Part shown: piece after piece, positions 901 to 28,758 of the stretch
Layout: each line of letters opens with the position of its first letter
Numbering within the stretch: position 1 is the stretch's first letter
NCBI GenBank assembly: GCA_977020255.1
Contig: CDROCS010000852.1
Span: forward strand, 310,001-374,000
Reading direction: 5' to 3'
DNA length: 64,000 nucleotides
From: Obrimoposthia wandeli
Lineage: Eukaryota
The notes under the pieces: model-generated
The model's database searches: none
Told to the model about the DNA's origin: nothing
Seen by the model: only the letters and a program-made list of their open reading frames with translations
Position numbers and translations under genes: made by a program

Positions 901-997
901 TCTTCTGTTTGTAGAATCTGGTTCTTTTGAATTTTGTCTACGAATGAAAATATTACTGTTGATTATAGTAAATAAAAATGAATAGTTTAATATAGTG

Positions 998-1710
998 AGT
1001 AGGTAGAAGGATGGAGTCTAAGCCACTTGACCCCCCCCCTTATGGTGTGACACCCTTTAGGGGGAGGCAACATCCTTCTTTGATATACCACTATGGTCGT
1101 CCATAGATTAAAGGGTCAAGTGGCTTAGTCTCCACCCTTTTTGAGATATACCACTATGAAAGGGTCAAGTGGCTTAGTCTCCACCCTTCTTTTTGAGATA
1201 TACCACTATGAAAGGGTCAAGTGGCTTAGTCTCCACCCTTCTTTTTGTGATATATCACTATGAAAGGGTCAAGTGGCTTAATCTCCACCCTTCTTTTTTT
1301 GTGATATACCACTATGAAAGGGTCAAGTGGCTTAGTCTCCACCCTTCTTTTTGAGATATACCACTATGAAAGGGTCAAGTGGCTTAGTCTCCACCCTTCT
1401 TTTTGTGATCTAGTCTCCACCCTTCTTTTTGGTTAACCACTAATTCAAAAGGTCAAGTGGCTTAGTCTCCACCCTTCTTTTTGTGATCTAGTATCCACCC
1501 TTTTTTTTGGCTAACCACTAATTCAAAGGATCAAGTGGCTTAGTCTCCACCCTTCTTTTTGTGATCTAGTCCATAATGAAAATTTAGGATAAAGTTCACT
1601 CTTATCAGTTAAGAATGTATTACGTAATCACACACATACTATTCTATGTGAAAATTTAGATCAAAGTTTTTCCTAGGTTTACACATCTAAAGAATTATGT
1701 TAAAATTTGT
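998..1710 (+). repeat. Left terminal inverted repeat of Polinton A with internal ~50-bp tandem iterons
   Basis: Reverse complement of 11952-12705. Contains about eight copies of GGGTCAAGTGGCTTAGTCTCCACCCTT. Confidence 0.95.
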
Positions 1711-1773
1711 ATTAAATCAAAAAATAATAAATAAGAAAGAAGTCAGAGAAAAATACAAAATTAAACACATTTA

Positions 1774-4700
1774 TTATGTAATTTCATAATGTCCATAAGC
1801 GCGGCTTCTATTTTTCTCGATCCAATAGCGTTTGTCATCTGATGAGCTGAGAGCAGTCTTTTGTATTATGATCGTGTATAGTTGATGATTTATTGTTCCA
1901 AACTTCTTTTGAGGTATAGTATATGCAATACCGTTTTCATACACGTCTAAATATGTTTGATGTACAACCGTTGAACCCTTAAGATTTACTCCTTTTGATT
2001 TATTATTTTCAAAGTCATCTTCAAACTTAAGTGAATAACATTTACAAAGTAAGAAAATCCATTCTTTATACATTCGTCCTTCCGATTCATCTTTAAATAA
2101 ACCTATTTTACTATTAAATTTATTAGAATATAATGGATCATTCACATTATAATTTGACGTATCTAATAATCCATCTGCAATCATTTTTGGTAACAACTGT
2201 TTTCTTAAATTAACGTTTTTACATCCCAAAAAGAATGAGTCGGTATCACCGGCAACTATATTAATTGAACAATTGAATAAATTACGATATATTTGCAAAT
2301 CATGATACTGAAGAGTATACATTCGTAATTTGCTAAGGTCTAGTACAGCTTGACCTATATAATTTGGTCGATCGAGACAAATAAAGTCTTTTCTTAATAA
2401 AACAGCTATTAAATTATCATGAATTTCAATTGTTCGTTGAAACATAGGTTTGCTAGTATATGTAATTAATTTTGTAGAACTAGTGCAGATGCGAAGATTC
2501 AATCGTTTCTTAACATTTTCAACGGTCTTTCCATACAAACTAACATTTTTAAGTTTATAAAAATCTTTGTCACATTTATTCGTTGCTTGTGATCTCATTT
2601 CTGAATTATATTCTATATATTCTGCGAATATCTTAGCCTGAGAGAATTTTACTGCTCGATGAATAATTGTTACCACTGCTCCTAAACTAACATACATCTG
2701 CAATAGTCTCCAATGAATAACATAATGACTTTTTGGCGAATGAGTCATTAAAAGTTTTTCAACTTTTTTACCAGGTGGACATTTCTTTTCTGGAGCTATA
2801 GGAAGATCATCTAAAAAGTCATGAAGGTTTTCTGGTATTACCAAGTCTACTTCCATAAAATAACCATATTCAATATGTTCCATGTTCACATTTTTCATTT
2901 CATGCAATATTTCGTTTAATTTTATATCATCAAGAATCCATTCAAAATCTCCTTTTGGTAAAGGTTGATCAAGAGCCCATCCATATAAATTATTAACATC
3001 TATATATAAAAGACTTGTTTCTTCATCTGCGACTACATGATGCTTATTGACAAATGTCATTCCTCCTCGTATACCCGAAGAAATCATGTTGTACATTTCA
3101 GGATCCTGCATCAGTTAAACCTTATGTTTTAACATTTTTAGAGCACTTGCCCAACTCAATCCAGGAATGCTAAAAAAGTTAAGTGGTTCTAAACCATCTT
3201 CACTGAGAGCTTTTCTTCTGAATGTTTGAAACACGTCAGCTAATAAATATACGTCAGTCTTTAAGTAAACTAACATATAATCCAACATATTTCTACAATT
3301 GGTTATTTTCCAAACATCTTGTGCTTTTTGATATTCAGTGTCTGTGATTTTATCATTCCATTTTACTGGTAAACTTAACTTATTCTGGAGGACATTTAAT
3401 GATGTAGCAAAATCATATGGGAATATTCCTTTGCCATCAATAAGTTTAGATGGAAAAACTGATCTTGTTAATGGAATAGTTGGTAATTTACCGGCTAAAT
3501 TTTCCAAAGATGATTGCAAAAATTGCAAAGAATCTATAAATCTCAGAGTTATTTGACCTAATCTTACAATCATGGCTTGAAACTTTTCCGTTGATTGTGG
3601 TATAATATTTATATCCCAGTCAGTAAATTTATTCAATGCATGTTTTAAAATATGATGTAAATCATAACCTCTGAGATTATGAAACACAATAGGTAAAGTT
3701 GGACGAAGTTTTCTTGATAAATTACATTCATTGCATGCAGGACCTAGATACTGTCCAGTAAAGTGATCATGATCTTTAACATATTTTTCAGATGATTCGT
3801 GACATAAATAACATTCATCGGCATTGCTAAAAGTATGAATCTCTGCATTTGTTAAGGGAATCATTACGTTTTTAAGAGCATCTAAATACCATGGCAAAAC
3901 CTTTTCTTTAGCCAAGTTCTCTATTGACTGAAGAAATTTAACTATGCAGTCATCACCAACATTATATTGATACTGGGTTTCAATTTCATCTGTACTCATA
4001 AATAACATACCAGATGCGACAGGCATATGCTTTTGATGATAACTCTCATCTGGTACTAATACAGATTCAAAATCAGCGTAAACGACATATTTCGGCGATA
4101 TAGTTTTTGACCAATCGTTGAATTTAACGTACTTATTCTTAGGCATAGTATACATTGTAGTGCTTTCTTGATTATAGTCACATAAAACTTTATGCTTTTC
4201 TAATGACAAATCGGTTTTGAAACCATGTAAACACTTTTCACACCATTTTCTGCTAATTCTAGTCGTTCCAGTTCGAATATTTAATACCCGGTTAAGACAA
4301 CTTATTCCTATATAATGAAACCGTTCCTTGGATTCTAGTAACAATAAATTAACTATAGTTCCTTCCTTCATTTTTGATTTGTATGCAACATCGATATAAG
4401 GATTCTTGATAACATCAGTTTTTGATTCTTTTTCACTTACCTCGTTGAATATGAATACATTTATTATTATACCAGGATTTTGCCGTTCAAATTTTGATAT
4501 ATTTGATATTTTCATAGGCATGTCTTCGGAATTATATACAAAATCATTTAAAAATCTTTCATAGTTGCTTGGTCTATTTCTATGTGAGTCTATTTCATTA
4601 TATTTAAGTATTGACAATATTGCATAAATAAAGCAAAGATTATCAGAGTTTAGAATATTTATGACTGCTTTAGATTTTGTAAGAGAATTTGGTGATTTAA

Positions 4701-5414
4701 TACAAATTTTAATACAAATTTTAAACAAATTTGACTATATTTAGTAACAAAAAAAGCATATTCAAGTATATTCATCAATTTCCAACCACTACCTTTTTCT
4801 GAATATTCTTCAACTTTATTTTCCATTGTATCTTCCATTTCTGAAATTATAGCATGTGAAAAAATCATTGCTCGATGCGAAGCATACCATTCTTTAGTTT
4901 CTCCATCATTCTTTTCAAACCTCATTCTAATGATGTATTGTATCTTTGCTTTTCCCATTAATTGCACTATTCTTTCTAGTTCGTTTAATAATGAAACTGG
5001 AACCTTAAGACTTACAAGATTGAGATGATCTACTTTCATGGATATCATTGAATAACTATTTTCTAATGATGTTTTAGTATGTATATTATCATTTATTTTA
5101 CGTTTTCGTGACGGAGTAGGAGCTGAAATTACTATGTTTGATGGTACATTAATTATATCAGTTCTTTTGCTTAAAGCCGGTACTTTAAATAATTTTTTCT
5201 TACTATCATTTTCATATTCTCTTAAATGACTAACATGTCGACTATAAAATAAGTTGTAATCAACATTTTCAGTGCTTAAACATTGTGGACATATGAAATA
5301 ATTTATCCTTTTGTATGAATAACCATAATATTTTTTCATTATATCATGACATACTTGAGGATTAAAATGTATATCCGAATAACAAAAATTTGAATAAGTT
5401 TTACATATACTCAT
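1774..5414 (-). pseudogene. Protein-primed DNA polymerase B (pPolB) of Polinton A, split into three ORFs by one frameshift (~4700-4730) and one in-frame TAA (3115-3117)
   Basis: ORF 4659-5414 has a CPQC..H..H finger and GSGW. ORF 3115-4728 has AVINI..DNLCF, YADFES (ExoI), an EndoVII-like CYLC..DHDH..G..C..CN, FHNLRGYD, FIDS and YLKTDV. ORF 1774-3111 has GIRGG, YIDVNNLYG, KLKNVSLYGK, GDTDS, GLFKDE and DDKR. The junction reads HKV*LMQDPEM versus TVELIQDPEM in family C. Confidence 0.95.
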
Positions 5415-5519
5415 CTGATGATATGATTGATTTGATTGGACTTGAGATATTGGTTGATTTGTATACTGAATAAAAATATATATATATATAAATACAATAA
5501 TTTAATTATTTTACTTACA

Positions 5520-5960
5520 ATGTTAACAAATATTAATTATAAAGGAATTTGCTTAGATGATGTATCTAAATTAAAATTTCGAACACGACCAGAACAATAC
5601 GTTTATAAAGCCAAAGATTATACAATACTTATTTTTAGAAATAAGAAATGCAGGATTATGGGATGTAAGGTACCTATTAAAAATATTTCTTACCCTTTAA
5701 GAATAAATATACTTGGTATTCAATCAATTACGATATGTGAAAATTTAGATCAAAGTATCAATCTATTTAAATTATGGAATGTGTTACGTAATACATGTTC
5801 ATTTGACCCTGAGGTTTTCCCAGGCTTAAGATTAAATATTTTCAATCCATTGTGTGTAAATATTTTCACATCTGGAAAGGTCGTAATTTTAGGTCTTAGA
5901 AATTTAGATTTTCAAGATCAAGTTAACGATATCATGACATACATTAAAAAAAGAAGTTGA
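5520..5960 (+). CDS. TATA-box-binding-protein (TBP)-like protein, 146 aa, encoded by the Polinton
   Basis: Two-repeat TBP core pattern: TILIFRNKKCRIMG (cf. TALIFSSGKMVCTG), IQSIT (cf. IQNMV), SFDPEVFPGL (cf. SYEPELFPGL), VNIFTSGKVVILG (cf. LLIFVSGKVVLTG). First ATG is at 5520; the track's 5436 start is a TTG upstream of the TATA-rich tract. Confidence 0.85.
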   Translation: MLTNINYKGICLDDVSKLKFRTRPEQYVYKAKDYTILIFRNKKCRIMGCKVPIKNISYPLRINILGIQSITICENLDQSINLFKLWNVLRNTCSFDPEVFPGLRLNIFNPLCVNIFTSGKVVILGLRNLDFQDQVNDIMTYIKKRS

Positions 5961-6059
5961 ATGCTCGAAATACAAATTCTCGGATATAAAATAAATAAAC
6001 AGAATGAAACAACTCTCATCTGGAGGTTTCATACAGCGACCGAATATTTTGATGTTTAA
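5961..6059 (+). CDS. 32-aa micro-ORF MLEIQILGYKINKQNETTLIWRFHTATEYFDV
   Basis: The ATG directly follows the TBP-like stop (TGA ATG). Resembles the C-terminal IRLxGY...W motif of the family-B ORFan pair. Confidence 0.3.
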   Translation: MLEIQILGYKINKQNETTLIWRFHTATEYFDV

Positions 6060-6140
6060 TAAATATTTAATAAAATGTTGTTATTGTTATAAACATGTAC
6101 TTATTCTGATATATTTATTTTATATTAATATTTATATATA

Positions 6141-6770
6141 ATGTTATTAACAAACAATTCGACTTTTCAAGTAGTAGGACCAAGTGGTAGTGGAAAAACT
6201 TTATTTGTTTGTAAATTATTAAATTCAAAAATGTTTAAAAATAAATTTAATAAAATATATTGGCATCAAGGTGGTGACGGAGAAGCTGGTTTAACAAACC
6301 AAGAATTTAATAAAATAAAAAACATTAAGATTATTAACGGTTTTGATGAAAATTGGACGACAAGACTCGTAAAAGGTGATGTAATTGTTATTGATGACTT
6401 ATATCAAGAGGCTAACAAAGAATCTGATTTTAATGATTTATTTACAAAAATTGCAAGACATAGAGAAGTTACTGTAATTTTTATAACCCAAAATTTATTT
6501 CATCAAGGAGGAAATCATCGTACTCGTAATCTTAATGTACATTATTTGATTTTATTCAAAAATCCTAGAGATCAAACAGTGATAGATTTTATTGCTCGTC
6601 AAGCATTTCCTCATAACAAGAGTTATTTAATTGATGCGTTTCATGATGCTACATCTTTACCTCATGGTTATTTATTTTTAAATTTTACTCAATCATGTCC
6701 TGATGATTTAAGAATTGTTACTGATATATTTAACCGTAATGGTATTACAGTCTATAAACAAAATAAATAA
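6141..6770 (+). CDS. A32/FtsK-like genome-packaging ATPase
   Basis: Walker A GPSGSGKT, Walker B VIVIDDL, then ARH...ITQNLF and [17 protein letters not shown], typical of Polinton ATPases. Confidence 0.95.
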   Translation: MLLTNNSTFQVVGPSGSGKTLFVCKLLNSKMFKNKFNKIYWHQGGDGEAGLTNQEFNKIKNIKIINGFDENWTTRLVKGDVIVIDDLYQEANKESDFNDLFTKIARHREVTVIFITQNLFHQGGNHRTRNLNVHYLILFKNPRDQTVIDFIARQAFPHNKSYLIDAFHDATSLPHGYLFLNFTQSCPDDLRIVTDIFNRNGITVYKQNK

Positions 6771-6790
6771 TAATAATGTTTTAAAATAAA

Positions 6791-7204
6791 ATGAATTTTA
6801 AAAAGAGTATTCTTAAACATAGTAAAAGGACAGATAAAGATGAAGTTAAAAAATTAATAAACACTGTATTATATGATCGTAATAATATTGAATTTTCAAA
6901 AAGTTTACCTTATTTTAAAACCTTAATTGACGTACCAAAAACGAATAAAATGAAAATGTTGAAATCATTTCCAATTTATGTAGTTGATGATTTAATAAAA
7001 ATTTTAAATAAAATAATTTATGGTAAAATTAAACCTGATGATAATATTTTAAAATATAAAAATTCATTAATAAATTTAGCAAATTCACGTGGTAAAATTA
7101 ATAAAAGAAACATTATTTATAATCAAAATGGCGGTTTCATATTGGCCCTACTGCCCGCTATAGCATCAGCAATAGCTAGTGTTATATCTTCAAGATGGGG
7201 ATAG
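6791..7204 (+). CDS. Basic putative virion core protein with C-terminal QNGG|F amphipathic tail
   Basis: Lys-rich 137 aa ending NQNGGFILALLPAIASAIASVISS. Homologue at 28383-28730 ends KQNGGFIGPVILVVASII. This position between ATPase and integrase is common in Polintons. Confidence 0.7.
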   Translation: MNFKKSILKHSKRTDKDEVKKLINTVLYDRNNIEFSKSLPYFKTLIDVPKTNKMKMLKSFPIYVVDDLIKILNKIIYGKIKPDDNILKYKNSLINLANSRGKINKRNIIYNQNGGFILALLPAIASAIASVISSRWG

Positions 7205-7303
7205 TTGTCTTAATAACGAAAATTATAATAATATTAAATAATTACATTCTTTCGTTTTATACAAACATATAAACAGTTTAAAATATATTTAACTTTTATA
7301 ATA

Positions 7304-7477
7304 ATGGGGATAAACAATACAAAGTTGTCTAACTTAATTATAAATTTTAATTCTTCATGCTGCAATGGAAAAGATTTGGAACAATCCAGAAGATCCAGAC
7401 GGTTATACAGGGTTAGAAAAATTGACAAAAAGAGTCAAACAATCAAAAACAAACACACAAAAATGGTTAAGAAATGA
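7304..7477 (+). CDS. 57-aa MG...CC ORF overlapping the integrase start in another frame
   Basis: MGINNTKLSNLIINFNSSCCNGKDLEQSRRSRRLYRVRKIDKK... is below the ORF-track cutoff. Homologue MGANPSLPKFKFSFYSNCCNGEDMVQ... at 28759-28977. Confidence 0.65.
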   Translation: MGINNTKLSNLIINFNSSCCNGKDLEQSRRSRRLYRVRKIDKKSQTIKNKHTKMVKK

Positions 7478-8391
7478 ATTATCATATAGTCTGAATAAAC
7501 CTTTAAGACGTAAATTCCCTACTAGATCATATAAAACTAATGGTATTAATTCGTTATGGCAGATGGATTTAATGGAAATGATTCCTTATTCTTCAGTAAA
7601 TAACGGATTCAAGTATATTTTAACTTGTATTGATGTATTTAGTCGTTTTGCAAGGGCAGTTGGTGTTAAATCAAAATCAGGTATTGATTTATTACATGCA
7701 ATAGAATCTTTAATTGTTGATGATGTACCAGTAAATATTCAAACCGATGAAGGTAAAGAATTTTTTAATTCACATGTTAAGAAATTATTTAAAACTGAAA
7801 ATATCAATCATTATTCAGTATATTCTCAATATAAAGCTGCAGTAGTTGAAAGATTTAATAGAACGTTAAGAGAACGGTTAAAGAAATATTTTACTAAACA
7901 AGGTAATAAGAAATGGGTGAATGTATTACCAAAAATTATTTATGCTTATAATAATTCTAAACATAGAGGTTTAGATGGTTTAAAACCTGTAGATGTAAAT
8001 AATAAAAATGAATTTGATATTTTGTTGAAACAAAATCTAAAAAGAAAAGAAAGTTAAATCTAAATATAAAATTGATGATTATGTTCGAATATCAAAAATA
8101 AGTACAAGTCCATTTATTAAAAATTTTAATCAAAATTGGAGTGATGAGGTTTTTCAAATTCATGATATTAATTATAAACAAAATCCAATAATGTATATTT
8201 TAAAAGATATTGATAACGTCATCATCAAAGGAAAATTTTATAAACAAGAGTTACAATTAATTGATAAACCTAAACTATATCGAATACAAGAAATTTTAGA
8301 AACTAAAGGTCGTGGTAAGAATAAACAATATTACGTAAAGTGGCACGGATACTCTGAACCTTCTTGGATATTTGCTTCTCAAATTGAATAA
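7365..8391 (+). CDS. Retroviral-type DDE integrase with C-terminal chromodomain; +1 frame break at 8041-8057
   Basis: WQMDL, IQTDEG and VERFNRT form the DDE triad. The +1 frame from 8053 reads VKSKYKIDDYVRISK...NWSDEVF...FYKQELQ...YRIQEIL...YYVKWHGY (chromodomain). Confidence 0.92.
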
Positions 8392-9404
8392 TGTCAAAAT
8401 ATATTATTTTACCTAGTAATAGTTGTCCAAGTACTCAACCTAACAATACAGCCAATCAATTTACTGTAGATTGGGAAAACTCTCTAAATTTAGATGGTGA
8501 ATGGGAGGTTGCCTTGACTGAATTTGTATTTAATTATACTCCTTTAACAATACAAACTAATTCAAAAATACTTTATAAAACGGAAAAGATAGAAATGAAA
8601 ACTTTCGATGTATCTTTTGCAATTTTAAATGGATTAATTTTTAATAATTTAAATACTGTTTTCAATTTCAAAATTACAAAGGATCAAAAATTAGAAATAA
8701 GTACAATTAACAGTATTCATCGAATGTTGTTAAAATTCGAAACTTTAGAAGAATCAAAAATTATAGGTTTTAATGAAATACAAAAAATTTCTAGTCATGT
8801 TATAACAAGTGATGAAATTGTTGACATAAATAAAAATATTCATGCTAAAATGAGAATTACAATTTATTATTTAGCTGAATATGAATACGAAATAAAATTT
8901 AATCAAAATTATTTGATACAAGATAGTTCTTCATTATGTAATATTATAGCCAGTAAATGTAATGAAATTTTTAAAAGCTGTAATATAGATTCAGACGGAT
9001 TATTTGATATTTTATTAAAGAAAAATGTAAAATCAGTTTTATTTGACGAAAAACTTGCATCTTTATTAGGTTTTAATAATGTTTTCTTTGAGAAACGAAT
9101 TAAAGGTTTTCAAAAACCAACACTTTCTAGCTCATATAATCAAATGTATATTTATACTAGTTTAACAGATTCTGTCTTAGTAGGATCTGATTATGTTCCA
9201 CTGTTAAAGTCTATTTGGTTAAAATCATTAAAATATCGATATGGAGATGTAGTAAATGTTAAAATTGATAATCCAATGTACTTGAAAATGAGAGATTCAA
9301 GTATTAATAGAATCGAGGTAAATATACGTGATGATTCTGGTAATTTAATTCCATTTTCATATGGAGCAAAAACTAGTTTAACTCTTCATTTACGTAAAGT
9401 ATAA
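8391..9404 (+). CDS. Minor capsid (penton-like) protein
   Basis: Polinton mCP pattern: N-terminal LPSNS...NTANQF...L.G.WEVALTE and C-terminal MYIYTSL...LVG...VPLLK...PMY...INRIEVNIRDDSG..IPF..G...LTLHLR. Confidence 0.8.
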   Translation: MSKYIILPSNSCPSTQPNNTANQFTVDWENSLNLDGEWEVALTEFVFNYTPLTIQTNSKILYKTEKIEMKTFDVSFAILNGLIFNNLNTVFNFKITKDQKLEISTINSIHRMLLKFETLEESKIIGFNEIQKISSHVITSDEIVDINKNIHAKMRITIYYLAEYEYEIKFNQNYLIQDSSSLCNIIASKCNEIFKSCNIDSDGLFDILLKKNVKSVLFDEKLASLLGFNNVFFEKRIKGFQKPTLSSSYNQMYIYTSLTDSVLVGSDYVPLLKSIWLKSLKYRYGDVVNVKIDNPMYLKMRDSSINRIEVNIRDDSGNLIPFSYGAKTSLTLHLRKV

Positions 9405-9441
9405 ACAATATAAATATATTTAAAATATAAATATATATAAA

Positions 9442-9845
9442 ATGAATACATCAATTATAAAATTTTATAGCAAAAGTCAACAGGGCGGTGAACTTCCCTA
9501 TTTCATTGGTAAACAATATGGATCTGGTTGGTATCAAACTATTTCTAGATTAGCTATTCCATTTATTAAAAAGTTGGTTTATCAGCAGCTACAAGTGCTG
9601 CCAATGTAATTGGTGAAACGGTAGGAACTGCGTTAACAAATCCAAAAAACATAATTTCATCTCTCAAAGAAAATACAATCAAAGAAGTCAAAACTTTGAT
9701 TCCAAAATTAAAAAATAATGCTGTTGAGAGTTTAAATAAAGTCGCAAATTGTGTTGAACAAAATGGAAAGGGTCTTAAACGTAAAAGAAATAATTTAAAT
9801 AGTATAAACAAACGTCTTAAAGGTACTATTTTCCAAAATGACTAG
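9442..9845 (+). pseudogene. Putative protease-cleaved membrane-lytic/core protein upstream of MCP; 1-nt frameshift at ~9570
   Basis: MNTSIIKFYSKSQQGGELPYFIGKQYGSGWYQTISRLAIPFIK, continuing in the -1 frame as KVGLSAATSAANVIGE...QNGKGLKRKR...IFQND. The break lies in an A5 run (A6 restores the frame). Confidence 0.65.
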
Positions 9846-11058
9846 TATAAAATCTGAATTGTGTATTTTCGATAGACCACTACCTCAAGTAGTGATTGAA
9901 AATTCAAGTTTTGAAGAAATATTTCCAATCAATTCAATTACTGGAAAAAATTTAAATGACATAGAATTTAATATTCATGCATCTGAAGAAGATTATCTGG
10001 ATTTGAATGATACTTTGTTAAATATTAAATTAAAAGTTGTAAATGAAGATGGTACTGATTTAATGAAAGATAGCGATGTAACTCCAGAGAATTACATGTT
10101 TCAAACTTTGTTTAGAGATGTTATTCTAACACTTAATAATGTAAAGGTTGAAGGAGGAAATGGAACGTATACTCATAAGGCTATATTCGATACTCTTTTG
10201 AATTTTAGTAGTGATACCAAGTATACTAACCTTGAATGTTCCGGGTATGATGATGATGCAGAAAATCGTAAACAATGGATTAGTGAATCTAAAATATTTT
10301 CATTGTGTAATTCAATTAGATTAGATTTCTTTGATCAACCAAAATATTTGATTCCAGGGATTAATGTTCATTTGAGATTTATGAGAAATCAGCATAATTT
10401 TTCGCTCTATTCAGAAACTTCAAAACCAATTATTCAAATTCTAGATGCTAGATTGTATGTTAGAAGAGTAAAAGTTGATTCTTCAGTAATGATTGGACAT
10501 CAGTTAGGTTTGCAAAGTCAGAATGCAGTTTACCCAATTAGAAAAACTCAGTTAGTAACATATTCAATTCCTCAGGGTTCTTTGGAACTTAATAAAGATC
10601 AAATATTCGGAGACTATCGTTTACCCAAGTTCATTTTGATTGCTTTCAAAGATACACCTCAGGGTGGTAAGGAATACAAAGTTAAATCTTCTACGTTCAA
10701 TACATTTAATGTTTCAACAATATCATTAGCTAGAAATACAGATTATCGAGAAACTTATAATCTAGATAATAACAATTTTTCATTAGCATATATGCAGTCA
10801 ATTATTCGAAATATGAATATTTTAGATAAAAACGTGAATAATGGTATCAGATTTTCTGATTTTAAATCAGGAAGTTCGATTTTCACTTTTCTATTAGCAC
10901 CAGATTTTGATATAAACACTACTCAAGTGCCTAAAACTGGTAATTTAAGACTTGAAATTAGATTTAATTCTCCTTTGACCGTTCCAACAAGTGTTTTGAT
11001 TTACGGAATATTTGATTCCGAAATTCAGATTACGAAAAATAAAACTGTGATTGTATGA
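9838..11058 (+). CDS. Major capsid protein (double jelly-roll, Polinton PY/hexon-like), intact 406 aa
   Basis: SELCIFD.P..QVVIE...EEIFPINS, IEF.I...E.DYLDLNDT, FFDQPKYLIPG, A.YPI, LPKFILIAF and GNLRLEIRF..PL motifs typical of Polinton MCP. Confidence 0.9.
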   Translation: MTSIKSELCIFDRPLPQVVIENSSFEEIFPINSITGKNLNDIEFNIHASEEDYLDLNDTLLNIKLKVVNEDGTDLMKDSDVTPENYMFQTLFRDVILTLNNVKVEGGNGTYTHKAIFDTLLNFSSDTKYTNLECSGYDDDAENRKQWISESKIFSLCNSIRLDFFDQPKYLIPGINVHLRFMRNQHNFSLYSETSKPIIQILDARLYVRRVKVDSSVMIGHQLGLQSQNAVYPIRKTQLVTYSIPQGSLELNKDQIFGDYRLPKFILIAFKDTPQGGKEYKVKSSTFNTFNVSTISLARNTDYRETYNLDNNNFSLAYMQSIIRNMNILDKNVNNGIRFSDFKSGSSIFTFLLAPDFDINTTQVPKTGNLRLEIRFNSPLTVPTSVLIYGIFDSEIQITKNKTVIV

Positions 11059-11431
11059 AGTAAGCTTATTGTATATTATATTCTTTATTTAAATTAGTAC
11101 TTTAGAAATTCATAAATCCGGAAAAATATTATTGAATAACAAATTTAATGGAGTATATTCATTGGATAAAATTCCATCATTAAAACCCGGAGGTTACATT
11201 ATCAATACTCATACTTCAAATCTACCAGGCGAACATTGGATAGCAATATTCGTTGACAGATTCGAGATTCGAGTGTTTGATCCTTTTGGATTCTATTATC
11301 CTGCAAAGTTGGTGTCTACACTTGAAAAAGAAAACATTCCAGTCTACTATAATCGAGTTAAATGTCAGAATCCATTAACTAAAAACTGCGGACCTCTGAG
11401 TCTTTTATGGTTGAAACTTCAACACAAATAA
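11055..11431 (+). CDS. Adenain-like cysteine protease with a predicted 38-nt intron (11060-11097)
   Basis: Spliced product MNTLEIHK...GVYSLDKIP...INTHTSNLPGEHW...FDPFG...CQ.....CG has the catalytic His, Asp and Cys. The ATG overlaps the MCP stop (ATGA). Confidence 0.85.
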
Positions 11432-11898
11432 TTTTAAGTATAAACAAATATATCATTATAGATTTTCATTTTATTTTTTCAAATGGCTTTTATATGAATG
11501 TTTTATTGATAATAATGGAGAATATATTCTTGTCTTGTTCATTTCATTACGTGTTTAAAAATCAAATACCATGGAGTAGTTTATCATTTACAGTTAAAAG
11601 AAAAAATCTATATTTGATAAATCATCATCATCAGTTATCCTGGTTTGAAGGTGAAAGCTCTGATATTCATATTGATGATGTTGAAACAATATTCTATGTT
11701 ATGGATTCTATTGATGGAAAGAAAATTAATTTAGTGAAACGAATGTTTCCAAATTTGAGAATTGTGAATTATAATAAAAGTTTCAAAAATTTAAAGAAAA
11801 TGCCAAAAAATATTCGATGTCCGTTTAGAAAACACGGAAAACATTGTGCTTATTTGAAATGTTTTTCTCTATGTATTGATTATGTAAATTGTATATAA
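11407..11898 (+). CDS. Accessory protein resembling a DEDD/Maelstrom-like nuclease-fold ORF seen in invertebrate Polintons
   Basis: IIIDFH...FK..IPWSSLS...KRKN.YL..HHHQLSWFEG...CPFRKHGKHCA pattern, recalled from Polinton accessory ORFs and not verified. Confidence 0.45.
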   Translation: MVETSTQIILSINKYIIIDFHFIFSNGFYMNVLLIIMENIFLSCSFHYVFKNQIPWSSLSFTVKRKNLYLINHHHQLSWFEGESSDIHIDDVETIFYVMDSIDGKKINLVKRMFPNLRIVNYNKSFKNLKKMPKNIRCPFRKHGKHCAYLKCFSLCIDYVNCI

Positions 11899-11951
11899 AT
11901 ATATTTATTAAGGATATTTTATTTTAATATATAATTTATGTTATTTAAATA

Positions 11952-12705
11952 AATTTTACCATAATTCTTTAGATGTGTAAGCCTGGAAAAACTTTGATCT
12001 TAATTTTCACATAGAATAGTATGTGTGTGATTACGTAATACATTCTTAACTGATAAGAGTGAACTTTAGTCTAAATTTTCACATAGAATAGTGTGTGTAT
12101 GATTACGTCATACATTCCTTAACTGATAAGAGTGAACTTTATCCTAAATTTTCATTATGGACTAGATCACAAAAAGAAGGGTGGAGACTAAGCCACTTGA
12201 CTCTTTGAATTAGTGGTTAGCCAAAAAGAAGGGTGGAGACTAGACCACAAAAAGAAGGGTGGAAACTAAGCCACTTGACTCTTTGAATTAGTGGTTAGCC
12301 AAAAAGAAGGTGGAGACTAGACCACAAAAAGAAGGGTGGAGACTAGATCACAAAAAGAAGGGTGGAGACTAGATCACAAAAAGAAGGGTGGAGACTAAGC
12401 CACTTGACCCTTTCATAGTGGTATATCACAAAAAGAAGGGTGGAGACTAAGCCACTTGACCCTTTCATAGTGGTATATCTCAAAAAGAAGGGTGGAGACT
12501 AAGCCACTTGACCCTTTCATAGTGGTATATCACAAAAAGAAGGGTGGAGACTAAGCCACTTGACCCTTTAATCTATGGACGACCATAGTGGTATATCAAA
12601 GAAGGATGGAGTCTAAGCCACTTGACCCCCCCTAAAGGGTGTCACACCATAAGGGTATATGTTGCCTCACCTCCGGTGGGGGGGGTCAAGTGGCTTCTAC
12701 CTACT
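11952..12705 (-). repeat. Right terminal inverted repeat of Polinton A
   Basis: Mirrors 998-1710. About six full and several truncated GGGTGGAGACTAAGCCACTTGAC units, plus an extra ~73-bp tandem duplication near 12000-12148. Confidence 0.95.
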
Positions 12706-13289
12706 ATGGTGTATGGTATTTTGAATTGGATTATGAATTTTAAGCTTGTGACAAACAATGTAATAATTTTTGTCAAGTTTATGTGATAATGGATTTTGAT
12801 GAAAATTTTGAAGAATCCAGAGACAAAGACAAAACCAGTTTTATTGGTAATGAAGATAGTATAATGTGCTTCAATATTTTTCAAGAGTTGATGAAAATTT
12901 AGGTTATACTCATATTAAAAATATGTAATAATCAATCAGTTTTAAATTTATAACGAAAACGTTTTAAAAAGTTGTTTAAAATTAAACTTTTACACATTTA
13001 AAAATAATTACCTGTATTTTTCATAATTTACTATTTATTTTATGGACTGTATATATTACTTTTGCTTAGAAATTTCATTTTTACAAATATTTGATTTAAA
13101 TATTCTATTCAACTCTGAGATATGTAATCTGTCAACTCCCACTGTGTAAATGTGGATATAGCACAATCATATCAATCTAACAAAAAGAACATTAAAAAAA
13201 TTAATATATTGAAATGGAATGGAATGCTTCTGAATCTAGCTTAAATTAAAAACATTTTAAAATTTTGAATAAACGTGTTTTGAAAAGCC

Positions 13290-14557: not shown

Positions 14558-17500
14558 CATTGGCTACCCAGTCGTGACTATGTGCTTTCAGTTGAAGAAC
14601 TACGTTTCGCACAAATTCCGCTTGGTGAGTGTCATTTCTGGTCGTACGCGAATTGTCACCGGTTTGTCAAGGTCCAAAGACACGATTGTATGGCCACAGG
14701 AAGTTGGGTGACCTTTATTTTACTATCCAAGTGACGCAGTTTGTTTTCGTGTCATTTTAACAATTTGACAAATCGATTTGCACACTAATTTGCTATATAA
14801 TAATGACATTTTAAAATTCCTTAAAAATAATATTAGTATTAATTATATCATTTTTAAAATTATGAATTTTTATTAACTCTTTGAATCCATTTAATATTGT
14901 TCAAATGCAAAGGTTACCTAGACTCTTTTTTAGAATATTTTTTTTTAAATAAATATATAGTTAGTAATAACTATGCTAATTACAATTTAAGGTCATTTGG
15001 TACAATGCAAAAGTTTGGGATAGCCAACTCAAAGTTTTTATTCAATATAATACGATATACCTGTCGCTACTCAACAGTGATAATCGTCAAAATTGTACAT
15101 CACATATAATAAATTAATAATAAAAGTATAAAACTGAATAAACTTTTGTTTAAAATATGTTATGAATAATATGTTTAGAAACAGATTTTAAAATCAATGA
15201 TTATACCTGAAATCAACGGTGATAATAACATAAATGCATACAGACACACACAAAGAAGGTGATGTAGCCTGTATTTTTTATTATGGAAAATATTCAATAT
15301 AACAGTGATACCTAAAATGAACGATGATAGAATTTTTCAAGAAATTAACGTTTCGTGAACTTAAAATGATGTTACTCTAATTATTTAACTTTCGTAAAAT
15401 AATCAATATTTTTAGGATAAACTTTTTTCTTAAAAGTAATAATGAAGCCGTATTTTATTTAATTCAAAGGAAATTTATATGAATATAATGCTAATTTCGA
15501 TAATAATGATGAAAATAATCCAGAATGTAGTGGTATTTATGACAAAATGTGAAAGACAAGATATACTTCAACTGTAAAATATTTTGCATAAGATACGTAA
15601 GATATGTAATTATTAGATTTTGGCACTTTGCAAATATTTGTTATATTACCTTTATCATATTTGTATCTTTATCGATCTACTTACTTTTTTTATCCGTACT
15701 GAGACTTAAAAAGCTGCCTGTTAAAAATTTTTAAAAATAACGCAATTTTATTTATGCAAAATGAATTTACATTGCTGCATAAAAGTCATTAAAATACTAA
15801 TGCTACAGATTTAAACAGCTTTGCTATTTCGTTTTTTGTTGTTGAAATATTTAATTACTTATACTTAATAGTAGTTTAAATTATATATATTTTTAAAGTA
15901 TGAAAACTAAATAAAGAAGAATTATGCGTTTTTTAATCATTTACAATGTCAATGTAGAAATTATAAAGCTTACTTTAAAGTAGAAATTATAATTGAAGTT
16001 TAGCACTATATCTAACAAAAATAGACTAATTTATTCTATTAACATTTTACATACTTGTTAAATATTTGTTAAATATTTGTCCCTCTTTTAGTTTTATATT
16101 TATACTTTAAAAAAATGTGTTAATTTTATATGAATTTCTATATGAACTAATTTTTGTGTTTGTTGAATTTAGAAAAAGGAAATTTATTTAGTAGAGTTGA
16201 AGTTATAACATAAATAATTCCTCAAATGTTGTAAAATTAATAAAAATTAATTTCGTCTGATACAGAGGAGGCCAACCTTTTCCATGACATGGGCTGCATT
16301 TGCATGTCTGAAGAACCACATCTAACCTCTATGATTTTCTTAAATAAATAATTCCTTAACATTTTAAAATAAAAATATTTAGTACTCCCAAAATACGGAG
16401 AACAGTTTTAGTGACTTATTTGTCCCTGGTGATTTAGTGACAACAGAGGGAGATCATTTGGTATACTTGATGCAACAACACGCAGATTGTTCTCCATTTT
16501 CATGTCCGTGATCCTCGTGCGTTGACAAGATTGAATCAAATACATTACAAATCCATTTTCCTGTATTTCCTGAATGAAACTATCAGTTTGGATATCAAAT
16601 TAAATTTCTAAATTCCAGACTTAGTTTTCTATATTTTGAGAGAAGTTATCTGCTGTATAATCCCGATCTGTATTGCAGCGGCGCCAGACTGAAGTAAGGC
16701 GGATCAACCAGTTCTACTACGAGCTGCTGGAGAAGGCTATTCCGGAAGAGCTGCGCCAGTACAGCTACGTGCCGGACAATGACCGAGCCTCTGTGCCGGA
16801 CTCTGTAGCAGAGAACTCGTCCTCTACTACCTCTTCATCGCAAGGCAACAAGCAGGAGGTAGCAGTTACTCATAGCAACAGCGGTGGTGGCAGTGTCAAC
16901 AAGACTGTGGTGCTCAAGAAGAAGGAGGTGCTGTCCGCAAATAGTAGTGCCCTCGTGGTGTCTTCTGGGCAATTACCTTCGCATCAGACCAATGGTCGAG
17001 TCAAGCATCAGAAACCGGTGAGAGACGATGATGATGTCATTTACTGACCCATTTAACAATAGTGTAAGTGAGTAAAATTATGTAAAATTTATTTTTTAAA
17101 TGCACGCAATACATTTTGGATTTACATAAATACATACATTTATGTTAGATCGAGATAAGTTTTGCACACAGTAAATGATATATCTGGAGTAGATATTGGC
17201 GCTCATGTATTATACATTTGTTAAACAAACGTAATAGACTGGAAGATCTATAATTCTTGTTTAATTAAACTGTTTTTCATAAGAAGCCAACAAGTAGATA
17301 CACGTGTCACTGATATCGCCAAGGTAATTAAATCATAACTAAATGATGATCAGACGCCAAAAGAGTGGTATTCCAACCTCAATCTATTATAATCAACCTG
17401 AAAATGTCAACACATAAATTTATGAAATCTTAGCAAAGCCATATTTAAACATGTATATATATGAATATTTTTAATAATGTATTTATACTTCTACAAATGA

Positions 17501-27699: not shown

Positions 27700-28200
27700 A
27701 TGAAAGAGTATATGCAATGGAGCCAAATAATAACCAAAACAAAAATTTGCAAGTTGAAGGGAATAACATATATTGAAGGATTTGATGCAACTTGGTGTGA
27801 AAAATTGAAAAAAGAAGATGTAATAATAATTGATGATTTGTATCAGGAAGCTAACAAGGAATCGGTCTTTAATAATTTATTTACAAAGATTGTAAGAAAT
27901 CGTGAAGTTACAGTTATATTTATCACTCGAAATCTTTTTCACAAAGGAGGTCACCATAGAACAAGAAATCTTAATGTACATTACTTAGTTTTATTTTAAA
28001 ATCCTATAGATCAAACAATTGTTAATTTCGTGGCCAGACAGGCATTTCCCCAAAATAAGAACTTTCTAGTTGATTCATTCCATGATGCTGCTAAACAAGC
28101 ACATGGGTATATATTTATTTACTTTAACAAGCTTGTCCAGATGATTTAAGTGTTTTAACCGACATATTTAATTCTAAGGGAGTAACTGTTTATAAACAAA
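27700..28200 (+). pseudogene. Packaging ATPase of Polinton B, 5'-deleted and frameshifted
   Basis: VIIIDDLYQEANKES...[14 protein letters not shown] is nearly identical to the family A ATPase; Walker A is missing. Confidence 0.9.
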
Positions 28201-28730: not shown

Positions 28731-28758
28731 ACAATTATTTATAAAATCAGCTAAAGAT

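What the first reader, a model, noticed from the sequence alone, without database searches (positions are those of the whole stretch)
5520..5960. A Polinton/Maverick virus encoding its own TATA-binding-protein homologue
Seen: an intact 146-aa ORF between pPolB and the packaging ATPase has both TBP half-repeats. Repeat 2 keeps both DNA-intercalating Phe positions (VFPG, NIFT) and the acidic stirrup (DPE) that contacts TFIIB in cellular TBP. Repeat 1 is divergent (LIF kept, first Phe position Y, SGK replaced by NKK). Established: TBP homologues occur in giant nucleocytoviruses, but I do not recall one in a ~12-kb Polinton. Inference: it may redirect host Pol II to the element's AT-rich promoters, act as a late transcription factor, or act as a dominant decoy of host TBP.
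Basis: partly seen in the sequence, partly recalled or inferred. Interest (0 to 1): 0.92.

Follow-up and report, generated by a model that had tools for sequence, protein, structure and literature searches.

The report
Minimal TATA-binding protein gene in Mavericks
An 11.7-kb virus-like Maverick/Polinton element in an animal genome carries an intact gene for a shortened TATA-binding protein; the gene is conserved across a whole lineage of such elements, and their virion and packaging genes all sit about 37 bases behind one unusual TATA variant, which suggests the element supplies its own promoter-recognition factor.

Summary
The ORF is real: 5520-5960 (+), 146 aa, intact. It lies between the protein-primed polymerase region and the A32-like ATPase of a Maverick bounded by 700-bp inverted repeats and a 6-bp target duplication (998-12705).

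It is a true TBP homologue (Pfam PF00352 E=2.5e-12; two AlphaFold models, pLDDT 94 and 97, match only TBPs in the PDB). It is not a full two-repeat TBP. The C-terminal lobe is a complete repeat that keeps both intercalating Phe and the two acidic TFIIB-contact residues. The N-terminal lobe is a four-strand sheet lacking both long helices.

It is a family: 121 database proteins share this architecture. 18 ORFs recovered from 24 contigs read through without a stop (15 also called as genes there; pairwise dN/dS 0.15-0.37). The gene sits in Maverick gene order in two arrangements.

New here: TATAAACA is the most over-represented 8-mer on the gene strand of related contigs (45 vs 5, about 5 expected). 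It lies a median of 37 nt before the ATGs of ATPase, integrase, capsid-like and protease genes, but not before the TBP-like gene, which has CCAAT plus canonical TATA.

Best reading: an early, host-driven, regulator-blind mini-TBP that directs Pol II to TATAAAC(A/G) promoters.

A 'TBP' label already appears in a figure legend of Starrett et al. 2021, so the gene's bare presence is not new.

The parts
992..997 (.). Left copy of the 6-bp target-site duplication (ATAGTG)
   Evidence: matches 12706-12711 at 5 of 6 positions
998..12705 (.). Maverick/Polinton element, 11,708 bp, termini AGTAGG...CCTACT
   Evidence: gene content
998..1732 (.). Left terminal inverted repeat, with arrays of 52-nt and 78-nt sub-repeats
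1774..5414 (-). Protein-primed family-B DNA polymerase region (PF03175, with an Endonuclease_7-like stretch), read as three consecutive ORFs. It is broken by one in-frame stop, plus one change of frame if the first 251-aa ORF belongs to the polymerase (not resolved).
   Evidence: no homologue found for the 251-aa ORF
5434..5439 (.). GATTGG (CCAAT box read on the other strand), 81-86 nt before the TBP-like ATG, in the divergent intergenic region
   Evidence: GATTGG/CCAATC occurs upstream of 6/17 TBP-like genes against 1/33 other element genes, Fisher p=0.004
5472..5494 (.). A/T tract with (TA)n, the TATA-like element of the TBP-like gene, 26-48 nt before its ATG and shared with the divergent polymerase side
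   Evidence: Relatives have canonical TATAWAWR here in 8/17
5520..5960 (+). TBP-like gene, 146 aa, intact. N lobe aa 1-50 (four strands, no long helices), linker, C lobe aa 62-145 (complete TBP repeat).
5990..5999 (+). Two overlapping AATAAA signals 30-40 nt after the TBP-like stop, suggesting a separate transcription unit
   Evidence: sequence read directly
6088..6095 (+). TATAAACA, 53 nt before the ATPase ATG
6141..6770 (+). A32-like packaging ATPase, 209 aa, open
   Evidence: 66-75% identical to relatives
6753..6760 (+). TATAAACA, 38 nt before the ATG of the 137-aa ORF, inside the 3' end of the ATPase gene
6791..7204 (+). 137-aa ORF conserved in relatives; weak adenovirus pX/mu-like C-terminus (possible core protein)
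   Evidence: PF05829 E=0.024, below cut-off
7268..7275 (+). TATAAACA, 97 nt before the integrase ATG (a GATAAACA lies 56 nt before it)
7365..8391 (+). rve integrase with C-terminal chromodomain. Broken by one change of reading frame; relatives have a single 351-357-aa ORF.
8391..9404 (+). 337-aa ORF in the position of the minor (penton-like) capsid protein, open. Identity inferred from gene order only.
   Evidence: no PDB sequence hit
9400..9407 (+). TATAAACA, about 39 nt before the remnant of a small conserved gene
9445..9579 (+). Remnant of a small gene (103-108 aa in relatives); only the N-terminal 42-47 residues are recognisable (truncated)
9803..9810 (+). TATAAACA, 35 nt before the ATG of the 406-aa capsid-like gene
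9838..11058 (+). 406-aa ORF in the position of the major capsid protein, open. Identity inferred from gene order only.
   Evidence: no PDB sequence hit
11093..11431 (+). Adenain-like protease (weak PF00770). The frame is open, but there is no ATG where relatives start.
11439..11446 (+). TATAAACA upstream of the conserved part of the 163-aa ORF
11407..11898 (+). 163-aa ORF of unknown function, conserved in relatives (homology 11545-11886). It lies directly upstream of the TBP-like gene in the second arrangement.
   Evidence: no Pfam or database hit
11927..12705 (.). Right terminal inverted repeat, with 52-, 72- and 78-nt sub-repeats
12706..12711 (.). Right copy of the target-site duplication (ATGGTG)

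Best explanation
The ORF encodes a minimal paralogue of the TATA-binding protein that is a conserved gene of one lineage of animal-associated Maverick/Polinton (adintovirus-like) elements.

Shown:
- It has the TBP saddle fold.
- The C lobe is a complete TBP repeat. It keeps both DNA-kinking Phe and the two acidic stirrup residues that contact TFIIB or its relatives in cellular TBP.
- The N lobe is cut down to a four-strand sheet, with one invariant Phe and without the two helices that make up the regulatory surface of cellular TBP.
- The gene is under purifying selection.
- Its own upstream region looks like an ordinary host Pol II promoter (CCAAT box plus canonical TATA).
- The ATPase, core-like, integrase, capsid-like, protease and 163-aa genes are each preceded, a median of 37 nt before the ATG and only on the coding strand, by TATAAAC(A/G).

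Inferred:
- The host machinery transcribes the TBP-like gene first. In the window it sits back to back with the polymerase.
- The protein then binds TATAAAC(A/G). The canonical C lobe would sit on the TATA half and the remodelled N lobe on the AAC(A/G) half.
- It recruits host TFIIB and Pol II through the conserved stirrup.
- Lacking the N-lobe helices, it escapes or bypasses the factors that dock there (TFIIA, TAF1, NC2, Mot1/BTAF1).

This would be a two-tier programme analogous to the TATT-specific viral TBP of beta- and gammaherpesviruses.
For: Fold and residues:
- Pfam TBP E=2.5e-12; PDB sequence hits are all TBP.
- Two AlphaFold2 models, pLDDT 93.6 and 97.1. In each, the top 44 Foldseek PDB hits are all TBPs, TM 0.65-0.79 over 164-182 columns.
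- Column shares in 122 family sequences: F39, F100 and F116 100%; position 96 Glu 93% (Asp in the window); E98 98%.
- Those two acidic positions are the TFIIB/TFB contacts of the C lobe, and the N lobe is the docking site of TFIIA, TAF1, Mot1, NC2 and Brf (PMC7221094; PMC10005294).
- No TFIIB-like or RNA-polymerase gene was found in the element by Pfam.

Family and selection:
- 16 close homologues. Profile search: 52 cluster representatives at E<=1e-30.
- 122 of 173 retrieved proteins have the N+C architecture, median 162 aa.
- 18 uninterrupted ORFs; dN/dS 0.15-0.37 in all 16 usable pairs.
- Synteny with Maverick genes in two arrangements.

Motif:
- TATAAACA is the top 8-mer on the gene strand of 17 non-window contigs (45 plus, 5 minus, 4.9 expected, z=16).
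- In the window there are 9 copies in 6088-11446, all on the plus strand. None occur in the polymerase region or the inverted repeats. The whole 64-kb window holds 20 against 10 expected.
- Distance to the next ATG: median 37, interquartile range 34-42, 33 of 50 within 32-45 nt.
- TATAAAC is upstream of 23/33 non-TBP genes against 1/17 TBP-like genes (p=1.5e-5). Canonical TATA (8/17 against 5/33) and GATTGG (6/17 against 1/33) show the opposite bias.
- The pattern is replicated in a contig fetched afterwards (L094).

Precedent: herpesvirus BcRF1/UL87-type TBP-like factors appear among the viral fold matches. They bind TATT late promoters and host Pol II (abstracts of PMC4922670, PMC8360532 and PMC7498053).
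Against: - There is no binding, expression or transcript-start evidence.
- TATAAAC matches six of the eight positions of the host TATA consensus, so host TBP may serve these promoters without help.
- With metazoan geometry (start about 30 bp after the TATA), a 37-nt spacing leaves leaders of only a few nucleotides, which is unusual for animal mRNAs. Initiation might instead occur in the motif, or the motif may have another role tied to the gene start.
- The N lobe has lost one Phe position by the internal alignment. I could not inspect model coordinates to see whether F20 replaces it.
- I could not test whether Mavericks without the gene lack the motif. The degraded second copy in the window has the motif but no detectable TBP-like gene.
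- Some motif copies lie in conserved coding sequence (the chromodomain), where protein constraint could explain them.
- This particular copy has Lys at a position that is Gly in 83% of relatives.
- It sits in an element with a broken polymerase, a broken integrase, a protease without its start codon and a truncated small gene.
Confidence: 0.5

Rival explanations
1. Decoy or repressor. The protein binds TATA-type DNA, or sequesters TFIIB, but cannot build a productive initiation complex because the N-lobe surfaces for TFIIA and TFIID are gone. It would then damp host transcription, or keep the element's own genes silent (latency).
For: The N lobe lacks both long helices, and these carry the regulatory and TFIIA/TAF1 interface in cellular TBP (PMC7221094). 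The DNA-kinking Phe are retained. The host-type promoter would allow early expression.
Against: A dedicated, position-locked TATA variant precedes the element's own structural genes. This fits an activator more simply. A pure DNA blocker would not need the TFIIB-contact residues conserved at 93-98%, although a TFIIB trap would.
Confidence: 0.15
2. Architectural DNA-bending protein for replication, integration or packaging rather than transcription. It would use the TBP saddle to bend AT-rich DNA at the element's ends or inside the particle.
For: In the window the gene lies between the polymerase and the packaging ATPase. The inverted repeats carry arrays of sub-repeats that could be protein-binding sites. 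From general knowledge, single TBP-type domains occur in non-transcription proteins such as RNase HIII and some DNA glycosylases.
Against: The gene's position is not fixed: it lies next to the ATPase in some relatives and after the protease and the 163-aa gene in others. The TFIIB-contact residues are conserved. No TATAAACA lies in the inverted repeats. The closest relatives by sequence and fold are genuine TBPs only.
Confidence: 0.12
3. The TATAAAC(A/G) motif is served by host factors alone (host TBP or another host protein). The TBP-like protein has some other transcription-related role, for example driving Pol III through Brf-type factors, or substituting for host TBP in cell types where it is scarce.
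For: The motif is a near-canonical TATA box. The stirrup residues that contact TFIIB are also used for Brf1/Brf2 (PMC7221094). The second window copy keeps the motif without the gene.
Against: A generic forkhead-site reading fails: TGTAAACA (6 against 7) and A/G/C-ATAAACA show no strand bias, while TATAAACA is 54 against 5. Canonical TATA variants show no strand bias in the same sequences, so selection is for this variant specifically. No tRNA or other Rfam RNA gene is present in the window.
Confidence: 0.15
4. Non-functional passenger: a fragment of a host TBP gene recently captured by this one element.
For: It is shorter than a full TBP. This copy sits in a decaying element.
Against: 121 database proteins have the same truncated architecture. 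ORFs without internal stops occur in 18 contigs or copies at 34-54% identity, with dN/dS below 0.4. Maverick synteny is conserved in soil, freshwater, host-associated and marine (TARA) assemblies. The N-terminal start and the invariant residues are shared.
Confidence: 0.02

Closest known systems
Cellular TATA-binding protein (Pfam PF00352; e.g. PDB 1mp9, 1qn3, 1cdw/1c9b, 3oc3)
   Same: Saddle fold; a complete C-terminal repeat; both C-lobe intercalating Phe; the acidic (D/E)-P-E stirrup that contacts TFIIB; 20-26% identity; Foldseek E about 1e-9 to 1e-10.
   Different: 146 aa instead of a core of about 180 aa. The N lobe has no H1 or H2 helix and is invisible to sequence models. One of the two N-lobe Phe positions is not Phe by the internal alignment. 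It is encoded by a mobile, virus-like element.
'TBP' gene labelled in elements with adintovirus-like PolB (Starrett et al. 2021, PMC8502044 Fig. 5; bioRxiv 10.1101/697771)
   Same: A TBP-like gene in a midsize eukaryotic linear dsDNA virus or Polinton-type element. The preprint legend lists TRAF and TBP together, and a related contig here (L092) carries two TRAF/MATH genes upstream of the TBP-like gene.
   Different: The papers give only a figure label. The figure and its sequences are not held, so I could not confirm that it is the same family. No architecture, family, selection or promoter analysis is given there.
Beta/gammaherpesvirus late transcription factor with a TBP-like domain (EBV BcRF1, HCMV UL87, KSHV ORF24)
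   Same: A nuclear DNA virus without its own RNA polymerase that encodes a TBP-like factor. The factor recognises a non-canonical TATA variant (TATT) in front of late (structural) genes and brings in host Pol II. Weak fold matches appear in BFVD (ranks 26, 33, 45).
   Different: The herpes proteins are 550-1000 aa, bind Pol II directly, need five viral partners, and have no detectable sequence similarity (TM 0.34-0.37). The protein here is a stand-alone 146-aa TBP that keeps the TFIIB-contact residues. This is an analogy of mechanism, not membership.
TBP-like proteins of giant viruses (Nucleocytoviricota; e.g. Heterosigma akashiwo virus, mimivirids, asfarvirus B263R)
   Same: Virus-encoded TBP fold (E 3e-8 to 1e-3).
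   Different: Those viruses carry their own RNA polymerase and nearly always their own TFIIB-like gene, and their TFIIB-contact positions are poorly conserved (about 40%; PMC7221094). Here there is no polymerase or TFIIB gene and the contacts are 93-98% conserved. Identity to them is lower (8-20%) than to cellular TBPs.
Metazoan TBP paralogue TRF2/TBPL1
   Same: A TBP paralogue used for a special promoter class.
   Different: According to PMC10005294, TRF2 has lost the intercalating Phe and does not bind TATA boxes. The protein here keeps three Phe at 100%. TRF2 also keeps both full repeats.

Membership tests
TBP (PF00352) | Sequence match to the TBP repeat above the curated threshold | tested here: met
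   46.9 bits against a cut-off of 22.9, E=2.5e-12, aa 67-130. All 16 close homologues carry PF00352.
TBP (PF00352) | Two complete tandem alpha/beta repeats (each S1-H1-S2-S3-S4-S5-H2) forming the saddle | tested here: not met
   The C lobe is complete. The N lobe has four strands with no H1 or H2 in the window protein, and only one-turn helices in a relative. The overall saddle superposes on TBP.
TBP (PF00352) | Four DNA-intercalating Phe, two per lobe | tested here: inconclusive
   F100 and F116 (C lobe) and F39 (N lobe) are 100% conserved. They map to Phe-148 and Phe-165 of Arabidopsis TBP. The fourth position aligns to Arg/Lys/Pro. The nearby F20 (70%) may substitute, but model coordinates could not be inspected.
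TBP (PF00352) | Two acidic C-lobe stirrup residues that contact TFIIB/TFB | tested here: met
   Position 96: Glu 93%, Asp 4% (Asp in the window). Position 98: Glu 98%. Their role is taken from PMC7221094 and PMC10005294.
TBP (PF00352) | N-lobe convex surface that docks TFIIA, TAF1, NC2 and Mot1 | tested here: not met
   The helices that form it are absent.
TBP (PF00352) | Binds and bends TATA-type DNA; nucleates a pre-initiation complex | not testable with these tools
   Only indirect evidence: a conserved TATA variant in front of the element's genes.
Polinton/Maverick (adintovirus-like) element | Protein-primed family-B DNA polymerase | tested here: met
   PF03175 E=5.4e-15. The gene is broken in this copy.
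Polinton/Maverick (adintovirus-like) element | Retrovirus-like (rve) integrase | tested here: met
   PF00665 E=1.7e-10 plus a chromodomain. There is one frame change in this copy.
Polinton/Maverick (adintovirus-like) element | Long terminal inverted repeats, AG...CT termini, 6-bp target-site duplication | tested here: met
   The duplication matches at 5 of 6 positions. The expectation of 6 bp and AG/CT ends comes from my knowledge of Kapitonov & Jurka 2006.
Polinton/Maverick (adintovirus-like) element | A32/FtsK-type packaging ATPase and adenain-like protease | tested here: met
   ATPase: PF04665, 26.0 bits against a cut-off of 22.8. Protease: only a weak match (PF00770, 17.9 bits against 21.3).
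Polinton/Maverick (adintovirus-like) element | Double jelly-roll major capsid protein and penton protein | not tested
   Assigned by gene order and conservation only. Profile searches of the PDB found nothing.
Herpesvirus late-gene viral TBP (BcRF1/UL87/ORF24) | Homology to the UL87 family; large protein with a Pol II-binding region; five partner proteins | tested here: not met
   No sequence hit. Foldseek E 6.7e-4 to 1e-2 with TM 0.34-0.37. No partner genes are present in the element.
Giant-virus orthogonal TBP/TFIIB system | Co-encoded TFIIB-like protein and viral RNA polymerase | tested here: not met
   No such Pfam hit in any ORF of the element at E<=1 or in neighbouring ORFs of relatives.

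The most novel reading that the evidence does not exclude
Animal Mavericks of this lineage run a self-contained two-tier transcription programme. A host-type CCAAT/TATA promoter makes the smallest known TBP (about 145-160 aa, with the regulatory N-lobe helices deleted). This regulator-blind TBP re-targets host TFIIB and Pol II to a private core-promoter variant, TATAAAC(A/G), placed about 37 nt before each morphogenesis gene. That would be a convergent counterpart of the herpesvirus late-gene viral TBP, and a natural demonstration of how little of TBP is needed for promoter recognition.
Probability: 0.4. Interest if true: 0.8.

Novelty: new variant of a known kind. Interest (0 to 1): 0.66.

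Why it matters
- The papers searched here turned up no account of how Polintons/Mavericks control their own transcription. This matters because many models place them near the root of several eukaryotic dsDNA virus groups.
- A conserved element-encoded TBP together with a private, position-locked TATA variant gives a concrete model. It can be tested with existing transcriptome data and structural work.
- The model also gives annotators a sequence signal for finding Maverick gene starts and for separating early from late gene classes.
- For transcription biology, the family is a natural deletion experiment on TBP. The DNA-binding sheet and the TFIIB stirrup are kept, while the lobe that receives TFIIA, TAF1, NC2 and Mot1 is stripped.
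- It contrasts with giant-virus TBPs, which have drifted away from host TFIIB and co-evolve with their own.

Tried and rejected
Searches that found nothing:
- IMG/VR scans for relatives of the capsid-like protein and the ATPase, single sequences and an alignment. These were meant to find Mavericks lacking the gene.
- Homologue searches for the 163-aa and 251-aa ORFs.
- Exact look-up of the window protein: not on record.
- Rfam scan of the window.
- Pfam on neighbouring ORFs of relatives.
- Profile searches of the PDB with the capsid-like and penton-like alignments.
- Source look-ups of 20 family clusters. None came from NCBI or UniRef, so no host names were obtained.
- IMG/VR hits to the TBP-like profile were only distant (30-40% over the C lobe) and were not followed up.

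Readings considered and rejected:
- TATAAACA as a generic forkhead-factor site. GTAAACA-type and non-T-initial variants show no enrichment or strand bias.
- TATAAACA as the polyadenylation signal of the upstream gene. Its distance to the upstream ORF end is scattered (sd 134 nt, and it lies inside the upstream ORF in 28 of 46 cases), while its distance to the downstream ATG is tight.
- A host-gene fragment without function (family data).
- Closer kinship to giant-virus TBPs than to cellular ones.

Limits:
- Origin (archaeal-like, eukaryotic or viral) is unresolved. Per-domain scores against Sulfolobus, Methanocaldococcus and microsporidian TBPs are equal within noise.
- dS is saturated (at least 1.2) in all usable pairs, so dN/dS values are rough.
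Full report
WHAT IS THERE. Window 5520-5960 (+) is an uninterrupted 146-codon ORF. Its ATG coincides with the N-termini of all relatives. The longer TTG-initiated ORF listed mechanically is therefore not the gene.

The ORF lies inside a well-bounded Maverick/Polinton element, 998-12705 (11,708 bp):
- The termini are AGTAGG...CCTACT.
- The inverted repeats are about 700 bp and carry arrays of 52- and 78-nt sub-repeats.
- The 6-bp flanks are ATAGTG and ATGGTG, a target-site duplication with one mismatch.

Gene content:
- A protein-primed PolB region on the minus strand (PF03175 E=5.4e-15).
- Then, on the plus strand: the TBP-like gene, an A32-like ATPase, a 137-aa ORF with a weak adenovirus pX-like tail, an rve integrase with a chromodomain, a 337-aa penton-position gene, a remnant of a small gene, a 406-aa capsid-position gene, a weak adenain-like protease and a 163-aa ORF.

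The host is an animal. The window also holds a Wnt exon (PF00110 E=4.2e-24) and macoilin-like exons.

STATE OF THIS COPY (counts only).
- Broken: the polymerase region (one in-frame stop, plus one frame change if the first 251-aa ORF belongs to it); the integrase (one frame change); the protease (no ATG where relatives start); the small gene between the penton-like and capsid-like genes (truncated).
- Open: the TBP-like gene, the ATPase, the 137-aa ORF, the penton-like and capsid-like genes, and the 163-aa ORF.
- So this is an endogenous copy that has begun to decay. Arguments about function rest on the family, not on this copy.

IS IT A TBP?
- By sequence, yes for the C half. Pfam TBP scores 46.9 bits (cut-off 22.9), E=2.5e-12, aa 67-130.
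- A phmmer search of the PDB returns 35 TBP chains, best Sulfolobus TBP at 1.6e-14. A family profile raises this to 8.9e-21.
- In eukaryotic TBPs the match is to repeat 2.
- The coordinates (query 54-130 = residues 102-179 of Arabidopsis TBP, 1qn3, one gap) can be combined with the numbering in PMC10005294. F100 and F116 then fall on the C-lobe intercalating Phe-148 and Phe-165. D96 and E98 fall on the TFIIB-contacting Glu-144 and Glu-146.

The N half (aa 1-50) is not seen by any sequence model.
- AlphaFold2 with a 17-sequence alignment gives pLDDT 93.6, pTM 0.83. Strands are 2-11, 26-30, 35-39 and 43-49, with no helix. A full S1-H1-S2-S3-S4-S5-H2 repeat follows in 62-145.
- A second model was made of a 43%-identical relative from a marine TARA contig, using a 91-sequence alignment. 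It gives pLDDT 97.1 and the same picture, with only one-turn helices in the N lobe.
- Both models match TBPs in the PDB, and nothing else at E<=1e-3: 44 hits each, TM 0.65-0.79 over 164-182 alignment columns. The match therefore covers both lobes.
- A profile-profile comparison of the N half with the C half gives a weak but sensible alignment (E=0.0037). It puts P24 on P101 and F39 on F116.
A conserved aromatic residue, F20 (Phe 70%), lies three residues upstream. I could not inspect coordinates to decide whether it takes over.

IT IS A FAMILY OF MAVERICK GENES.
- The word-indexed search found 16 proteins of 105-170 aa at 43-53% identity, all from metagenome or raw-read assemblies.
- The exhaustive profile search found 52 cluster representatives at E<=1e-30 and 648 at E<=1e-10.
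- Of the 173 sequences retrieved, 122 have the N-lobe plus one-C-lobe architecture (median 162 aa). 21 are ordinary two-repeat TBPs.
- Column shares in 122 sequences (121 database proteins plus the window protein): F39, F100, F116 and M47 100%; R45 and N114 99%; E98 and P24 98%; position 96 Glu 93%; G42 83% (Lys in the window).
- None of the 20 clusters looked up comes from NCBI or UniRef. JGI's pipeline calls some of them TBP.

Context was recovered for 24 contigs. There are two arrangements:
- (a) TBP-like, ATPase, 137-aa gene, integrase, as in the window (L001, L008, L011, L016, L017, L092).
- (b) [PolB], ATPase, ..., capsid-like, protease, 163-aa gene, TBP-like (L019-L023, L093, L094).

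Accessory genes differ between contigs: TRAF/MATH in L092, a RING finger in L001, LRR in L094. 18 ORFs read through without a stop. All 16 pairs with a usable dS give dN/dS of 0.15-0.37, with dS saturated, so this is a conservative sign of purifying selection.

A PROMOTER MOTIF THAT SEPARATES THE TBP-LIKE GENE FROM THE REST. The motif first appeared when the upstream regions of orthologous genes were lined up. A blind 8-mer count then confirmed it:
- On the gene strand of 17 non-window contigs (67 kb), TATAAACA ranks first. It occurs 45 times on the gene strand and 5 on the other, with 4.9 expected (z=16).
- In the window, 9 of 20 copies lie in 6088-11446, all on the plus strand. None occur in the polymerase region or the inverted repeats. 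Four more lie on the gene strand (plus one on the other strand) in a second, degraded copy. Ten are expected for the whole window on both strands.
- The distance from the first T to the next ATG of an ORF of at least 50 aa has a median of 37 nt and an interquartile range of 34-42. 33 of 50 cases fall within 32-45 nt. Random positions give a median of 243 nt.
- The distance to the end of the upstream ORF is scattered (sd 134 nt), and the motif lies inside that ORF in 28 of 46 cases. It therefore belongs to the downstream gene and is not a polyadenylation signal.
- It is not a generic forkhead site. TGTAAACA (6 against 7) and A/G/C-ATAAACA show no bias. TATAAACA is 54 against 5 and TATAAACG is 9 against 1. 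Canonical TATA variants are unbiased.
- TATAAAC precedes 23 of 33 ATPase, 137-aa, integrase, penton-like, capsid-like, protease and 163-aa genes, but only 1 of 17 TBP-like genes (Fisher p=1.5e-5).
- The TBP-like genes instead have canonical TATAWAWR (8/17 against 5/33, p=0.02) and GATTGG/CCAATC 40-130 nt upstream (6/17 against 1/33, p=0.004).
- In the window these features are GATTGG at 5434-5439, a (TA)n tract at 5472-5494, and AATAAA twice at 5990-5999 after the stop.
- L094, fetched after the motif was defined, shows the same split. It has four TATAAACA, all on the gene strand, before capsid-side genes. The TBP-like gene has a canonical TATA box 44 nt before its ATG, and three other accessory genes have CCAAT plus TATA.
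- Caveat: the copies before the penton-like gene lie in the conserved chromodomain coding sequence, so protein constraint may explain those.

MECHANISM PROPOSED.

Shown:
- A TBP fold; a canonical C lobe with DNA-kinking and TFIIB-contact residues; an N lobe without the helices that form the docking surface for TFIIA, TAF1, Mot1, NC2 and Brf (PMC7221094).
- No TFIIB-like or RNA-polymerase gene in the element.
- Two promoter classes.

Inferred:
- The host transcribes the TBP-like gene from an ordinary promoter.
- The protein binds TATAAAC(A/G) and recruits host TFIIB and Pol II.
- It is indifferent to regulators of host TBP.

The kinks are at base steps 1-2 and 7-8 (PMC10005294). The motif fits this neatly: a canonical 5' half (TATA) faces the canonical lobe, and a fixed non-canonical 3' half (AAC-A/G) faces the remodelled lobe. 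This last point is inference only.

The closest functional precedent is the TBP-like late factor of beta- and gammaherpesviruses, which binds TATT and host Pol II. It turns up as a weak fold match.

The contrast with giant-virus TBPs is informative. Those have poorly conserved TFIIB contacts and travel with their own TFIIB. Here the contacts are 93-98% conserved and no TFIIB gene is present.

WEAK POINTS.
- There is no binding or expression evidence.
- Host TBP may use TATAAAC unaided.
- The 37-nt spacing implies very short leaders if initiation is about 30 bp downstream of the motif.
- The co-occurrence test (motif in lineages without the gene) could not be run, because no other Mavericks could be fetched.
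- The capsid assignments are by gene order only.

NOVELTY.
- A 'TBP' gene label exists in Starrett et al. 2021.
- Searches of the held literature for Polinton, Maverick, adintovirus or polintovirus together with TBP or TATA found nothing else.
- As far as I can see, the following are not described: the truncated architecture, the size and conservation of the family, its two syntenic positions, the retained TFIIB contacts, and the TATAAAC(A/G) promoter class.
- I rate it a new variant of a known kind (virus-encoded TBP-like factors).

SLIPS, AS REQUIRED.
- In my private reasoning, not in any tool call, note or script, I once wrote out from memory a short stretch of the repeat-2 motif of cellular TBP and some residue numbers of yeast and human TBP. 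All residue mappings given here rest on tool alignments and on numbers printed in PMC10005294.
- Also in my reasoning, I worked out from the ORF bounds where breaks in the polymerase lie. Those places are not repeated in this report or the notes.

Noticed in passing
window 27700-36850: A second, more diverged copy of the same kind of element (ATPase, 137-aa gene, integrase with chromodomain, capsid-like and polymerase pieces; 45-69% protein identity to copy 1). It is heavily degraded: many short ORFs, with polymerase pieces on both strands. No TBP-like sequence is detectable, but it keeps TATAAACA on the gene strand at 27374, 27683, 28191 and 28366.
   Followed up: partly
window 48293-48436 and 62188-62481: Two further isolated Maverick fragments: the N-terminal part of the penton-position protein (44% identity) and the C-terminal half of the ATPase (54% identity). 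The region has been hit repeatedly by this element family.
   Followed up: partly
window 28187-28198 and 62469-62480: TATAAACA occurs on both strands in an overlapping palindrome (TGTTTATAAACA) at the 3' end of the ATPase in both extra copies. Copy 1 has only the plus-strand motif at the equivalent place (6753).
   Followed up: no
window 1110-1571 and 11990-12569: The inverted repeats are built largely of tandem sub-repeats (52 nt x 5.8 and 78 nt x 3.1 on the left; 72, 78 and 52 nt on the right) sharing a core GGGTGGAGACTAAGCCACTTGAC. These are possible protein-binding arrays at the element's ends, and the copy number differs between the two ends.
   Followed up: partly
window 1774-5414 (-): The polymerase region gives a Pfam hit to Recombination endonuclease VII (PF02945, E=4.6e-6, above cut-off) just before the PolB domain. 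It also has a Cys-protease-like (OTU-type) motif near the start of its middle ORF. The 251-aa ORF at its 5' end has no detectable homologue anywhere.
   Followed up: partly
window 52374-52874 (-); 16673-17044 and 20961-21329 (+): Host exons: a Wnt-family exon (E=4.2e-24) and weaker macoilin-like coiled-coil exons. These show the window is from an animal genome of about 30% G+C. The species was not identified.
   Followed up: partly
L092 854-6447; L001 448-900; L094 6231-7730: Relatives carry different accessory genes next to the TBP-like gene: two TRAF/MATH-domain genes (L092), a RING finger (L001) and an LRR protein (L094). The TRAF plus TBP pairing matches the list of host-derived genes in the legend of the Starrett et al. 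preprint.
   Followed up: no
L094 5500-5590, 8660-8750, 9440-9535: In the marine contig, three accessory genes other than the TBP-like gene also have a CCAAT box about 75 nt and a canonical TATA box about 45 nt before the ATG. The host-type promoter class may therefore cover all early or accessory genes.
   Followed up: no
L001 4933-5556: The ATPase of this related contig contains one in-frame stop, so some of the related contigs are also endogenous, decaying copies rather than free viruses.
   Followed up: no
window 6791-7204 (+): The C-terminus of the 137-aa ORF gives a weak match to adenovirus protein X/mu (PF05829, E=0.024, below cut-off). This is consistent with the pX-like domains that Starrett et al. 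describe in adintovirus virion genes.
   Followed up: no
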